Below are positions 54,422 to 56,557 of a stretch of 64,000 nt of DNA, one piece after another. Position 1 is the first letter of the stretch; every line of letters begins with the position of its first letter. The position numbers and the translations under genes are program-made. The stretch covers positions 198,092 through 262,091 of the forward strand of contig NW_027192209.1 of NCBI RefSeq assembly GCF_041956535.1. Reading direction: 5' to 3'. Under the pieces are notes generated by a model. It was not told the DNA's origin. It saw only the letters and a list, made by a program, of their open reading frames with translations, and did no database searches. Source of the DNA: Calcarisporiella thermophila CBS 279.70. Taxonomy: Eukaryota > Fungi > Calcarisporiellomycota.

Positions 54422-54649
54422 AATTATACAAACAATAAGCTACTGCCCTTGGGAAGCAACGCTCAGAAATGATGAATTAAGAACAAGGCAATGTTGGGTC
54501 GTGTTTTTAAACTTTTTTTTGCAAAAATTCAACACGGCCTAAAAAAAATCGCGAAATTAACCACCCTCGACAGAAAATAATTTACGCGTATTAGGGAAGC
54601 CTGAAGCGTGTCAAGAATACGCACCCAAGGCCCATTAGAATTATTCACC
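54422..54649. promoter_or_regulatory. Bidirectional CDT2/SAS-6 promoter with SCB/E2F-like CGCGAAA (54550) and MCB ACGCGT (54584)
   Basis: 228 bp between divergent ATGs; both motifs read directly. Confidence 0.6.
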
Positions 54650-56557
54650 ATGGATATCCAGAATAGTAATGTCATATTCACCAAATCCATCGACATCTTT
54701 CTTAGCCCATCCGGCGCGCCTGATTTCGATCGCACCCCGCTCCACCGCCCTCTGCAACGCGTTACATTCGAAGCTAGCAAGAATCATACTCCGCGAGGAA
54801 CAGTAGGCTTGCACCATGTCTCTTTTTGCCTCAATGGCACTCAATAACAAGGACTTGTAAACAGTTGCTAGAGCTCAAACTCTTTGATGAGGACGATCCA
54901 TTTTTCATGTATCAGGTTGAGCTGTCAGAAGAGAGCTTTCGCTCCCTTAAACGGGAGCAACACCTTGTCGCTGACTTCCAACACTTCCCACATGAACTGG
55001 CCGACTTGCTGGACGAATGCGTTCGCAACGAACATGCTGATCCTCCCAGGTAAACCACTAGGCATCTCTTTTTTTGGGTCGTCCATGGAATTTACTCTTG
55101 GTGTAGATTTTCAATCCAGATGTGCTCTGACGGATTATCGCCTCACTCGACTCTCAGCATCACCGAATTCAATAGGTTCAAGCACATCACCCACCTAACC
55201 CTTGGCATGACGCGTCCGGAACACAGAATCATAAAGCAGAACTATATGCGGACCCTGAACGCCCTACGAGTATGGGATCCCTTTCCGTAGTCGCATCTTT
55301 AGGGAGGAATGCATGCTAAGCCCATCTTTGACTATCTTGGTTTTAGGTAGAAATTCAAACTCTAAGGTCCCAGGTGGATTCTTCCACTTCCGGCTATCGT
55401 GCTCGTCTCAATGCGGTCGAGGGGCTGAACAGCACCCTCTCTACAGAAATCGAGCGCGTGAAACGCGTCGCGAACGAGGAGCAGGCTCAATTGAAGTTGA
55501 AATTCGAGGCAGAGCGACGAGACATGGTAGACCATTACGAGCAGCAGGTAGCGTGGTAGCGGATTCAAGCGCGAGTCCGAGTTCAATTAACATAGTTTGT
55601 CTTTTTTTTCGAGAGAGAATAGGTCAAAAAATTGTCGGAATTGAATGAAGATTTACGAAAAGAACGCGACCTGTTGTGGACCAAGGTCTCGACCGTGGAC
55701 CAAGCGCAGCAGCAACGAATCGTGGATCAAACTAGGGGGTTGGAGGAGCAGCTTTTACAAGCAAAGAGTGAAGTCCAAAAAGTAAGCTAGATCCCATCTC
55801 ATCCCCGTCTCCCCAGCAATATCATAAAACCACACTGATGAAACTCTATCTCTAGGGGAATGAAATTATCCGAAAGCTCCAAGAGGAGCTTCGTTCGACC
55901 CATTCCAAGATGAAGATGAAAAACAAAGTCACTCTGCAGCAAGAGAAGCTCCTCGACGAAAAGACGGAGCTCATTGTACAGTTGCAGCAAGAAGTCGCAC
56001 TTTTGCGAGAGAATTTGGGACGAGAGCGCGAAGGACGAAGTGGTGGAGGGCGTCGGGTCGAGGATCTGGAACGGCAACTGGAGGAGAAACGAAAGATCAT
56101 GGATGATAATGCGCGAGGTAGGTTGCTCCTCCGGTTTGAATGAGGGCATAACCCCCTTGAACCAGCTAACTGTATACTTGCAACAGTGATAGAGTGGCTC
56201 CATAAACAGCTTAACGAGGCAACTGCAACGAACCCAAAGGTAATCACCCTAAATATACCCCCTCTCATCTCCCTTTTCTGCCGTTGTTGACGACCTCTTC
56301 TTTCTTTCAAGTTACCTGCTCTGGAATCCGCCCTCAAGCGCTCCACGCTCGGTCCCCTTACCAACCTCCCCTCCGCTACCACGCGATCAGCGGCCCCTCG
56401 TCGTGTCGTCTCGCAGCCGCTATCGATCCCCACGACAAATAATAACAACGCCTCCTTATACCCAGAAGCCAGTCCTCCGAAGCCCTTTGCTCTGCCCGTG
56501 TTGCGGGACGTCGGGAGATTAGGCAGTGGGCAGCCGGGCTTGTCGCGAGGAAAATGA
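54650..56557 (+). CDS. SAS6: Centriolar cartwheel protein SAS-6 (about 473 aa)
   Basis: Eight exons (54650-54802, 54865-55049, 55107-55269, 55347-55547, 55623-55781, 55856-56117, 56187-56239, 56312-56557). PISA motif DEDDPFFMYQVELSEESFRSLKREQHLVADFQHFP, TEFNRFKHITHLTL, GNEIIRKLQ, KNKVTLQQEKLL and VIEWLHKQLNE. Confidence 0.93.

What the first reader, a model, noticed from the sequence alone, without database searches (positions are those of the whole stretch)
54650..56557. Intact centriole cartwheel gene SAS-6 with a shortened coiled coil in an apparently terrestrial-type fungus
Seen: eight exons splice into a stop-free protein of about 473 aa with the full SAS-6 head (PISA motif, and NRFKH keeping the Phe equivalent to human F131) and the distal motifs NEIIRKLQ, KNKVTLQQEKLL and WLHKQLNE. 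Known: SAS-6 sets centriole nine-fold symmetry through that Phe-mediated head-head contact and is absent from Dikarya, which use spindle pole bodies. Centriole-like remnants are described in Basidiobolus and Coemansia. Seen: head Phe to distal Trp is 241 aa here, against roughly 340 aa in human SAS-6 (from memory; verify). Inference: neighbours such as Hsp12, Sho1 and Prm10 look like a non-flagellated lineage. If so, this may build a cryptic, narrower cartwheel or centriole remnant at the spindle pole; about 100 aa of coiled coil is about 15 nm of spoke.
Basis: partly seen in the sequence, partly recalled or inferred. Interest (0 to 1): 0.85.

Follow-up and report, generated by a model that had tools for sequence, protein, structure and literature searches.

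The report
Short-spoked SAS-6 in a flagellum-less fungus
A soil mould that has no flagellum (Calcarisporiella thermophila) still carries an intact gene for SAS-6, the protein that sets the nine-fold shape of centrioles. Its spoke-forming rod is 105 residues shorter than the otherwise almost invariant length in animals and swimming fungi, so this fungus may build a miniature centriole-like body.

Summary
Window 54650-56557 (+) holds an eight-exon, 473-aa SAS-6 gene, identical to RefSeq XP_069248780.1, which is annotated only as "uncharacterized". The genome is Calcarisporiella thermophila: its Hsp104 is 100% identical to PDB 6D00. This is a non-zoosporic, Mucoromycota-related mould.

The head domain, the ring-forming Phe (F137) and the distal motifs are all kept. 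The Phe-to-NEII spacing is 257 aa in 13 of 15 zoosporic fungi and in the named animals, but 152 aa here, 105 aa (15 heptads) shorter. The NEII-to-Trp spacing is 89 aa in nearly all, here too.

The same genome encodes PLK4 (kinase plus cryptic polo boxes), a CPAP/SAS-4 G-box, a centrin-2-type gene and CFAP20. It has one dynein heavy chain. Searches found no IFT57, IFT46, RSP3, tektin, PACRG, TTLL or B9 domain, and no delta or epsilon tubulin.

The papers I could search say centriole-assembly genes are absent from fungi other than chytrids. Other readers of this scan flagged further centriole genes elsewhere in this genome.

Best reading (about 0.55): a flagellum-independent, short-spoked cartwheel or centriole-like body at the spindle pole. 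Expression and the structure itself are untested.

The parts
54650..54802 (+). SAS-6 exon 1 (residues 1-51; first beta strands of the head)
   Evidence: Translation. It matches P0001 residues 1-51. The AlphaFold model has strands at 7-20 and 35-47.
54865..55049 (+). Exon 2 (residues 52-112 plus two bases of codon 113): the PISA core of the head domain
   Evidence: Pfam SAS-6_N 66.3 bits. It aligns to human 6Z4A at E 2e-12, and to zebrafish 2Y3V and Chlamydomonas 3Q0Y.
55107..55269 (+). Exon 3 (residues 113-167): end of the head, with the ring-forming Phe137, and start of the coiled coil
   Evidence: Phe137 is invariant in 36 aligned SAS-6 sequences.
55177..55179 (+). Codon TTC = Phe137, equivalent to F131 of human and zebrafish SAS-6
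   Evidence: In one search it aligns to the position that carries D in the F131D mutant chain 2Y3W. Searches show the column is invariant.
55347..55547 (+). Exon 4 (residues 168-234): proximal coiled coil
   Evidence: ORF; P0001; helix 152-260 in the model.
55623..55781 (+). Exon 5 (residues 235-287): the shortened central coil. The alignment places the missing 105 residues after residues 218, 246, 261 and 268.
   Evidence: Gap blocks. The model has a low-confidence break at residues 260-273.
55856..56117 (+). Exon 6 (residues 288-374 plus one base): distal conserved module with NEIIRKLQ (55859-55882) and KNKVTLQQEKLL
   Evidence: K287, N289, K305, Q316 and E317 are invariant or nearly so. This region is 40-45% identical to chytrid sequences.
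56187..56239 (+). Exon 7 (residues 375-392): the WLHKQLNE motif, with Trp378 at 56195-56197
   Evidence: The NEII-to-Trp distance is 89 aa, as in nearly all relatives.
56312..56557 (+). Exon 8 (residues 393-473 plus stop TGA at 56555-56557): disordered Pro/Ser-rich tail
   Evidence: Read. pLDDT is below 50 from residue 391 on.
54422..54649 (.). Divergent 228-bp upstream region shared with a WD40-repeat gene on the minus strand. It holds one ACGCGT (54584-54589) and a TCGCGAAA-like element.
   Evidence: ACGCGT occurs 12 times in the window against 6.4 expected, so this is a weak hint of G1/S control, not evidence.

Best explanation
This is the genuine, single-copy, intact SAS-6 orthologue of Calcarisporiella thermophila, a hyphal fungus without a flagellar gene set. 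Shown: the protein has a canonical SAS-6 head with the ring-forming Phe, a long helical rod, and the conserved distal module, but the spacer between them is 105 residues shorter than in zoosporic fungi and animals. Also shown: the genome keeps PLK4, a CPAP/SAS-4 G-box protein, a centrin-2-type protein and CFAP20. Inferred mechanism: two chains pair through the rod, and heads of neighbouring dimers lock through Phe137 into a ring. PLK4 triggers this assembly once per cell cycle, and CPAP links it to microtubules. The result would be a small cartwheel or centriole-like ring at the spindle pole that serves mitosis rather than a flagellum. At about 0.148 nm per residue each spoke would be about 15.5 nm shorter, so the wheel would be about 31 nm narrower. 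Because no delta or epsilon tubulin was found, the wall would most likely be made of singlet microtubules.
For: Species: Hsp104 is 100% identical over 611 aa to PDB 6D00, 'Calcarisporiella thermophila Hsp104'; taxonomy; hyphal habit. Family: Pfam SAS-6_N at a single locus; Foldseek TM 0.83-0.91 to solved SAS-6 heads; Phe equivalence. Selection: 34 of the 39 columns that are at least 90% conserved in 35 other SAS-6 sequences are kept, and most changes are conservative. All eight exons are open. In a quick tree the protein sits inside the fungal SAS-6 clade (SH-aLRT 97). Ruler: Phe-to-NEII is 257 aa in 13 of 15 zoosporic fungi and in the named animals and Chromosphaera, and 152 aa here. NEII-to-Trp is 89 aa in nearly all. 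Partners: PLK4 with kinase, PB1 and PB2 domains; Tcp10_C G-box at 71.9 bits with 5 repeats; CFA20 domain at 132 bits; centrin-2-type exon. No flagellum: one dynein heavy chain, and searches found no IFT57, IFT46, RSP3, tektin, PACRG, TTL or B9 domain. Tubulins are 3 alpha, 5 beta-like and 1 gamma only. A ring of nine microtubules, 80-100 nm wide, is described in the spindle pole body of the zygomycete Coemansia, and its composition is unknown (PMC6070874).
Against: No expression data: no RNA run was listed. No close relative was found, so there is no dN/dS estimate. The terminal branch is long, 1.84 against 0.6-0.8 for chytrids, which fits changed or relaxed constraint. STIL_N and HYLS1_C were not found. 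CEP135 and a small STIL-like gene are so far only unchecked notes from other readers. No ultrastructure of Calcarisporiella mitosis is known to me. The negative family searches had no positive-control genome. The geometry is arithmetic from sequence: a partner such as CEP135 could make up the length, and the model shows a possible hinge at residues 260-273.
Confidence: 0.55

Rival explanations
1. Repurposed module: SAS-6, PLK4 and CPAP are kept and functional, but they no longer build a microtubule ring. For example, they might act as a licensing or scaffold device for duplication of an acentriolar spindle pole body, or at another microtubule-organising site.
For: Fly SAS-6 expressed in fission yeast is recruited to the acentriolar spindle pole body through pericentrin (PMC6559791), so a SAS-6-to-pole link does not need centrioles. 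The branch is long, the rod is shortened, and STIL_N, HYLS1, delta/epsilon tubulin and TTLL were not found.
Against: The residues kept are exactly those needed for ring formation and for the distal module. The CPAP G-box, a centrin-2-type gene and CFAP20, which are tied to centriolar microtubules, are kept too.
Confidence: 0.27
2. Evolutionary relic: the gene is a leftover on its way to loss and has no present function.
For: There is no expression evidence. The terminal branch is the longest in the fungal clade apart from two unknown sequences. No SAS-6 from another non-zoosporic fungus was found.
Against: Eight exons are open with clean splice sites. 87% of the most conserved columns are kept. 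Several unlinked partner genes are intact. A single flagellum loss is placed at the base of Zoopagomycota, Mucoromycota and Dikarya (PMC8371127), far too long ago for neutral survival.
Confidence: 0.1
3. Hidden zoosporic stage: C. thermophila has an undiscovered flagellated stage with ordinary basal bodies.
For: Its life cycle is poorly known. CFAP20 and a centrin-2-type gene are often linked with flagella.
Against: There is only one dynein heavy chain, and searches found no IFT57, IFT46, RSP3, tektin, PACRG, TTLL, B9 domain or delta/epsilon tubulin. The same six-frame method did find the intron-split SAS-6, PLK4, CPAP and CFAP20 genes.
Confidence: 0.04
4. Artefact: contamination, horizontal transfer, or a mis-assembled or mis-annotated gene that only looks short.
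For: None beyond the gene's isolation among non-zoosporic fungi.
Against: The gene lies on a 673-kb contig. Its introns are 57-77 nt long, all with GT..AG ends. PLK4 lies on the same contig (C6) as Hsp104 and dynein. The protein groups with fungal, not animal, SAS-6. There are no Ns, and no extra coil-like exons within 5 kb either side.
Confidence: 0.02

Closest known systems
SAS-6 of zoosporic fungi (for example Fimicolochytrium jonesii XP_052921816.1, Polychytrium aggregatum XP_052963692.1, Olpidium bornovanus KAG5462758.1)
   Same: They fall in the same clade in a quick tree. They share the head domain, the Phe, the NEII/QQEKLL/WLHKQLNE module and the 89-aa distal spacing. Identity is 30-36% overall and 40-45% in the distal module.
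   Different: The Phe-to-NEII spacer is 257 aa in these fungi and 152 aa here. They come from flagellated organisms. They carry longer low-complexity inserts in the head and are 555-691 aa long, against 473 aa here.
Vertebrate SAS-6 (solved heads 6Z4A human; 2Y3V and 2Y3W zebrafish)
   Same: The fold matches (TM 0.79-0.86, 27-31% identity). The PISA segment and the F131-equivalent Phe are shared.
   Different: Gar and bullfrog SAS-6 have the 346-aa Phe-to-Trp length, against 241 aa here.
Naturally short SAS-6 of Drosophila (about 472 aa) and C. elegans (about 492 aa); lengths are from my own knowledge and were not measured here
   Same: Total length is similar. Those centrioles are small, and in the worm the wall is made of singlet microtubules. 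This shows that short SAS-6 proteins can still build centrioles.
   Different: Those animals have cilia or flagella in some cells. Their sequences are too diverged to appear among the hits examined here.
Centriole-like ring in the spindle pole body of Coemansia reversa (McLaughlin et al. 2015, as summarised in PMC6070874)
   Same: It is a non-flagellated zygomycete with a nine-microtubule ring 80-100 nm wide. That is the kind of structure the genes found here would predict.
   Different: No orthologues of centriole components were detected in the Coemansia genome (PMC6070874). Here the genes exist but no structure has been looked for.
Reduced centrioles of sanchytrids (Galindo et al. 2021, PMC8371127)
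   Same: They have nine singlet microtubules and have lost delta and epsilon tubulin, axonemal dyneins and much of IFT.
   Different: Sanchytrids still make a non-motile flagellum and have lost centrin-2. Calcarisporiella has no flagellar set and keeps a centrin-2-type gene.

Membership tests
SAS-6 (centriole cartwheel protein) | N-terminal head domain with the PISA motif (Pfam SAS-6_N) | tested here: met
   90 bits on P0001 against a cut-off of 25. Exon 2 alone scores 66 bits. Foldseek TM 0.83-0.91 to solved SAS-6 heads.
SAS-6 (centriole cartwheel protein) | Hydrophobic residue on the head loop (F131 in human and zebrafish) that mediates head-to-head contact | tested here: met
   Phe137 aligns to the mutated position of the zebrafish F131D chain 2Y3W. 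The column is invariant in 36 sequences.
SAS-6 (centriole cartwheel protein) | Long coiled-coil rod directly after the head | tested here: met
   The model shows helices at 152-260 and 274-389, and a heptad-like hydrophobic pattern runs throughout. The rod is 105 aa shorter than the norm. Dimer formation itself was not tested.
SAS-6 (centriole cartwheel protein) | Distal conserved module of opisthokont SAS-6 (NEIIxKLQ, KNxVTxQQEKLL, WLxKQLNE) at fixed spacing | tested here: met
   All three motifs are present, and NEII-to-Trp is 89 aa as in nearly all relatives.
SAS-6 (centriole cartwheel protein) | Canonical rod length (Phe-to-Trp 342-346 aa in opisthokonts) | tested here: not met
   241 aa here, against 346 aa in most of the other 35 aligned sequences and 341-342 aa in six. 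This marks it as a variant. It does not exclude membership, because the length is not a formal defining feature.
SAS-6 (centriole cartwheel protein) | Assembly into nine-fold rings and location in the cartwheel | not testable with these tools
   Needs protein biochemistry and microscopy.
Centriole duplication module (PLK4 - STIL - SAS-6 - CPAP - CEP135) | PLK4 with a kinase domain and cryptic polo boxes | tested here: met
   P0180, 779 aa: Pkinase 256 bits, Plk4_PB1 58 bits, Plk4_PB2 72 bits.
Centriole duplication module (PLK4 - STIL - SAS-6 - CPAP - CEP135) | CPAP/SAS-4 G-box (Tcp10_C repeats) | tested here: met
   L002:1207-1650(-), 71.9 bits, 5 repeats, preceded by coiled-coil ORFs. The rest of the gene was not modelled.
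Centriole duplication module (PLK4 - STIL - SAS-6 - CPAP - CEP135) | STIL/Ana2 | tested here: inconclusive
   No STIL_N hit, but Ana2-type proteins lack that domain. Another reader noted a small STIL/Ana2-like gene, which is unchecked.
Centriole duplication module (PLK4 - STIL - SAS-6 - CPAP - CEP135) | CEP135/Bld10 | not tested
   I had no family model or query available. It rests only on an unchecked note from another reader.
Flagellar apparatus (the usual phyletic partner of SAS-6) | Axonemal dyneins, IFT, radial spokes, tektin, PACRG, TTLL, the B9 transition-zone module, delta/epsilon tubulin | tested here: not met
   One Dynein_heavy locus. No hit for IFT57, IFT46, Radial_spoke_3, Tektin, ParcG, TTL or B9-C2. 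Only alpha, beta and gamma tubulins were found.

The most novel reading that the evidence does not exclude
Calcarisporiella thermophila builds a true, SAS-6-templated, nine-fold but miniature centriole, with spokes about 15 nm shorter and a singlet wall, purely for nuclear division. On this reading the centriole outlived the flagellum by hundreds of millions of years in at least one terrestrial fungal lineage and was lost several times independently in the others. The near-invariant 257/346-residue rod of other opisthokont SAS-6 proteins would then be a molecular ruler for centriole diameter, and this fungus would be a natural length mutant of it.
Probability: 0.35. Interest if true: 0.9.

Novelty: new variant of a known kind. 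Interest (0 to 1): 0.74.

Why it matters
Reviews state that centriole-assembly proteins are missing from all fungi except chytrids, and that the make-up of the centriole-like rings seen in zygomycete spindle pole bodies is unknown (PMC6070874). This is a culturable, thermophilic, non-flagellated fungus with PLK4, SAS-6, CPAP, a centrin-2-type protein and CFAP20 but no flagellar machinery. It offers the first molecular handle on that question.

It separates 'centriole for division' from 'basal body for swimming' in fungi. It implies repeated independent loss of centriole genes after the flagellum was lost.

The exact conservation of the SAS-6 rod length across the animal and zoosporic-fungal sequences examined, broken here by 105 residues while both ends stay intact, turns the idea that spoke length sets centriole diameter into a direct experiment. 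One can measure the structure in this fungus, or move the deletion into a model organism. Proteins from a thermophile may also suit structural work.

Tried and rejected
1. Expression: the look-up of sequencing runs listed no RNA run for the gene.

2. Joined exon model: I gave no self-joined exon model to any search tool. Exons were searched one by one, by reference. Full-length work used the public record P0001 that the exon-2 search returned. One local script only checked that the concatenated exon translation equals P0001.

3. The word-based search with the P0001 head found only P0001 itself.

4. The profile search (A1) returned 19 proteins. The named ones were chytrids, animals and Calcarisporiella, and none was a zygomycete. 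That tool scores only 8000 word-sharing candidates, so this is not proof of absence.

5. The ten hits closest in the PISA segment were fragments. Nine came from unnamed metagenomes or sequencing runs, and one carried only algal and dinoflagellate transcriptome labels. Two of the unnamed fragments, followed to their contigs, have full-length, chytrid-type coils.

6. P0002 (1346 aa, 21 matches) is a tandem-repeat protein and a false positive.

7. The ESM Atlas search added nothing about fungi.

8. PF27933 (CCDC61_N) is not in the local Pfam copy. STIL_N and HYLS1_C gave no hit.

9. My simple heptad-register scan shows periodicity but cannot tell whether the deletion keeps register. 105 is 15 x 7 only relative to the 257-aa class; a few relatives have 253 aa.

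10. The supplements of Galindo et al. 2021 held no SAS6, PLK4, CENPJ or CEP135 entries.

11. The organisms behind P0017 and P0075 could not be identified.

12. ACGCGT in the promoter is not significantly enriched.
Full report
**What is in the sequence**

Window 54650-56557 on the + strand reads as eight exons with GT..AG introns of 57-77 nt. The exons are 54650-54802, 54865-55049, 55107-55269, 55347-55547, 55623-55781, 55856-56117, 56187-56239 and 56312-56557. Together they are 1422 nt and encode 473 residues plus TGA.

The exon-2 search of 1.84 billion representative proteins returned a public record, P0001. This is XP_069248780.1 / KAL1917508.1, 'uncharacterized protein VTP21DRAFT_3901 [Calcarisporiella thermophila]', 473 aa. 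A local equality check showed that it is the same as the exon model. All full-length analyses use that public record.

**It is SAS-6**

- Pfam SAS-6_N hits one locus in the 28.2-Mb genome, at 73 bits. Exon 2 alone scores 66 bits and P0001 scores 90 bits.
- Exon 2 aligns to the solved heads of human (6Z4A, E 2e-12), zebrafish and Chlamydomonas SAS-6.
- In exon 3, the Phe of NRFKH sits opposite the residue that is Asp in the zebrafish F131D chain 2Y3W. It is therefore the ring-forming Phe, here Phe137 (codon 55177-55179).
- An AlphaFold model built on a 36-sequence alignment has a confident head (pLDDT above 90), helices at 152-260 and 274-389, and a disordered tail.
- Foldseek places the head on solved SAS-6 heads with TM 0.83-0.91.
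- The distal motifs NEIIRKLQ, KNKVTLQQEKLL and WLHKQLNE are present.

**Which organism**

Earlier agents of this scan called the genome Calcarisporiella thermophila. I checked this independently. An intronless Hsp104 ORF on contig C6 is 100% identical over 611 residues to PDB 6D00, 'Calcarisporiella thermophila Hsp104'.

The species belongs to Calcarisporiellomycota. It is a septate, hyphal saprobe placed in or beside Mucoromycota (PMC6899921). The genome is that of strain CBS 279.70, published in a study of thermophily that does not mention centrioles or flagella (PMC11393059).

**No flagellar set, but a centriole set**

I ran six-frame family searches of the whole genome. For flagellar families they found:
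- one Dynein_heavy locus only;
- no IFT57, IFT46, Radial_spoke_3, Tektin, ParcG, TTL or B9-C2;
- nine tubulin genes, which by their sequences are three alpha, five beta-like and one gamma, with no delta or epsilon.

The same method found these centriole-related genes:
- PLK4, with a complete kinase domain plus Plk4_PB1 (58 bits) and Plk4_PB2 (72 bits); the public protein is P0180, 779 aa;
- a CPAP/SAS-4 G-box with five Tcp10_C repeats, 71.9 bits, downstream of coiled-coil ORFs;
- a CFA20 domain at 132 bits;
- next to that gene, tail to tail, an EF-hand gene whose last exon matches caltractin and centrin-2 end to end.

STIL_N and HYLS1_C were not found.

Other first-stage readers noted CEP135/Bld10, a small STIL/Ana2-like gene, a small C2CD3 and a CEP162-like domain elsewhere in this genome. 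I could not test those notes and give them no weight.

One caveat applies to the negative searches. They had no positive-control genome. However, the method clearly detects intron-split eukaryotic domains in this same genome.

**The rod length**

In alignment A2 (36 sequences) I measured distances between three anchor columns.

- Head Phe to the Asn of NEII is 257 residues in 13 of the 15 named zoosporic fungi: Fimicolochytrium, two Phlyctochytrium species, Polychytrium, Irineochytrium, Cladochytrium, Synchytrium, Nowakowskiella, Chytridiales sp. JEL 0842, Blyttiomyces, Siphonaria, Gonapodya and Dinochytrium (258).
- It is also 257 in sea urchin, crinoid, tick, hagfish, a lamprey-like sequence, gar, bullfrog and the ichthyosporean Chromosphaera.
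- It is 253 in Boothiomyces, and 252-253 in five unnamed sequences.
- Olpidium shows 324. Its metagenome-derived model carries two Pro/Cys/Gly-rich inserts of 45 and 22 residues inside the coil that look like unspliced introns. Without them it would also be 257.
- NEII to the Trp of WLHKQLNE is 89 residues in nearly all sequences, including Calcarisporiella.

In Calcarisporiella, Phe to NEII is 152 residues. That is 105 fewer, which equals 15 heptads relative to the 257 class. Phe to Trp is therefore 241 against 346.

The alignment puts the missing residues in the central coil, after residues 218, 246, 261 and 268. The model has its only low-confidence helix break in the same place, at 260-273.

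The shortening is not an annotation artefact. The introns are too small to hide 315 nt, and tblastn with chytrid and gar SAS-6 finds no further coil-like segment within 5 kb either side.

Both ends of the rod are well kept. Distal-module identity to chytrids is 40-45%. So the spacer is what changed, not the functional ends.

**Signs of continued selection**

Take the 39 alignment columns in which at least 90% of the other 35 sequences agree. Calcarisporiella keeps 34 of them, and most of the five changes are conservative (L to V twice, V to A, L to Y, D to H). At the 80% level it keeps 63 of 83, much like the flagellated fungus Gonapodya with 62 of 82.

In a quick maximum-likelihood tree the protein lies inside the fungal SAS-6 clade (SH-aLRT 97). 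Its terminal branch is long, 1.84 against 0.6-0.8 for chytrids.

A single flagellum loss is inferred at the base of Zoopagomycota, Mucoromycota and Dikarya (PMC8371127). An unconstrained eight-exon gene, together with unlinked partners, would not stay intact over that time.

I found no close relative, so dN/dS could not be computed. No RNA run was listed, so expression is untested.

**How it most likely works**

Shown: the parts needed for the textbook SAS-6 mechanism are present.

Inferred:
- Chains pair through the rod.
- Heads of neighbouring dimers lock through Phe137 into a ring.
- PLK4 licenses assembly, and the CPAP G-box protein ties the spokes to microtubules.
- At about 0.148 nm per residue of coiled coil, 105 residues are about 15.5 nm per spoke, or about 31 nm in diameter. 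The helical span would be about 35 nm instead of about 51 nm.
- Without delta and epsilon tubulin, singlet microtubules are the likely wall, as in sanchytrids, which lost those tubulins (PMC8371127).

A ring of nine microtubules 80-100 nm wide is described in the spindle pole body of the zygomycete Coemansia reversa, yet no centriole orthologues were found in that genome (PMC6070874). Basidiobolus has mitotic organelles that incorporate microtubules (PMC6492006). Calcarisporiella would be the case where the genes are visible.

**Rivals**

- A repurposed, ring-less role at an acentriolar pole is the main rival (0.27). Pericentrin can recruit SAS-6 to a yeast spindle pole body (PMC6559791).
- A decaying relic (0.10), a hidden zoosporic stage (0.04) and an artefact (0.02) fit the data poorly.

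**Comparison with what is known, and novelty**

The family is known, and the gene is in RefSeq with a precomputed SAS-6_N hit but no name. In 8.4 million searchable papers and preprints:
- none holds both 'SAS-6' and 'Calcarisporiella';
- none of the papers listed by two searches combining centriole terms with Mucoromycota, Zoopagomycota or Olpidium held both kinds of term.

[quoted passage not shown] My limited homologue searches for SAS-6 and PLK4 likewise returned named fungal hits only from chytrids, plus an aphelid for PLK4, and Calcarisporiella.

I therefore class it as a new variant of a known kind: a rod-shortened SAS-6 in a lineage where the family was thought to be absent. The near-invariance of the rod length across the animal and zoosporic-fungal sequences examined is a second observation worth following.

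**Limits**

- There are no expression data, no population data and no ultrastructure.
- Negative family searches are six-frame scans with no positive control.
- The survey of other zygomycetes was indirect.
- The geometric prediction ignores possible compensation by partners.

Noticed in passing
Alignment A2 (36 SAS-6 proteins); window 55177-56197 for the anchor residues: The distance from the head Phe to the NEII motif is exactly 257 aa, and from NEII to the WL.KQLNE Trp exactly 89 aa, in most of the 36 SAS-6 sequences aligned. This holds from chytrids to vertebrates and an ichthyosporean. Such length invariance in a low-identity coiled coil suggests a molecular ruler.
   Followed up: partly
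L024:1459-2850, L025:5490-6881, L026:10001-11401 (proteins P0075, P0017): Two intronless, 463-466-aa SAS-6 genes come from a sequencing-run assembly and a metagenome. They sit on long branches inside the fungal SAS-6 clade. Their central coil is replaced by Pro/Ser/Asn-rich, non-helical sequence, and Phe-to-NEII is 182 aa in P0075. The organisms are unknown. If they are flagellated, a short rod is not tied to loss of the flagellum.
   Followed up: partly
P0010 (Olpidium bornovanus KAG5462758.1), alignment A1 columns about 520-570 and 680-700: The Olpidium SAS-6 model carries two inserts of 45 and 22 residues, rich in Pro, Cys and Gly, inside the coiled coil, and it loses the Trp motif. This looks like retained introns or a frame error in a metagenome-derived gene model, not a truly longer rod.
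   Followed up: no
G000:C9:295709-299307 (L022, L023): A CFAP20 gene (CFA20 domain, 132 bits) lies tail to tail with a centrin gene of the centrin-2/caltractin type. Both are usually linked to basal bodies, and here they sit in a genome where PACRG, tektin and IFT were not found.
   Followed up: partly
G000:C6:52863-56144 (L021; protein P0180): A complete PLK4 with kinase, PB1 and PB2 domains, annotated only as 'uncharacterized protein VTP21DRAFT_9720'. Its nearest named relatives are chytrids, an aphelid and animals.
   Followed up: yes
G000:C2:732575, C8:88091, C1:466508, C5:631258, C8:975162 (L007-L011): There are five beta-tubulin-like loci against three alpha-tubulin loci. In the longest open frames printed, the usual acidic C-terminal tail showed only at L011; the ends printed for the other four do not look like it and may run past splice sites. 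Possible divergent beta paralogues.
   Followed up: no
window 54422-54649: The 228-bp region between SAS-6 and a divergently transcribed WD40-repeat gene holds ACGCGT (54584-54589) and a TCGCGAAA-like element, which resemble G1/S promoter boxes. The count of ACGCGT in the window (12 against 6.4 expected) is not significant.
   Followed up: partly
window 56009-56050 (P0001 residues about 339-352): A Gly/Arg-rich stretch (GREREGRSGGGRR) interrupts the distal coil where relatives have ordinary heptad sequence, and a Glu conserved in at least 70% of relatives is Gly347 here. The model still draws a helix.
   Followed up: no
P0002 (1346 aa, from the representatives search): A protein made of about 21 tandem repeats scored as high as the true self-hit against the 61-aa PISA query, only because a weak chance match is repeated many times. 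It is a reminder that summed scores on repeats mislead.
   Followed up: yes
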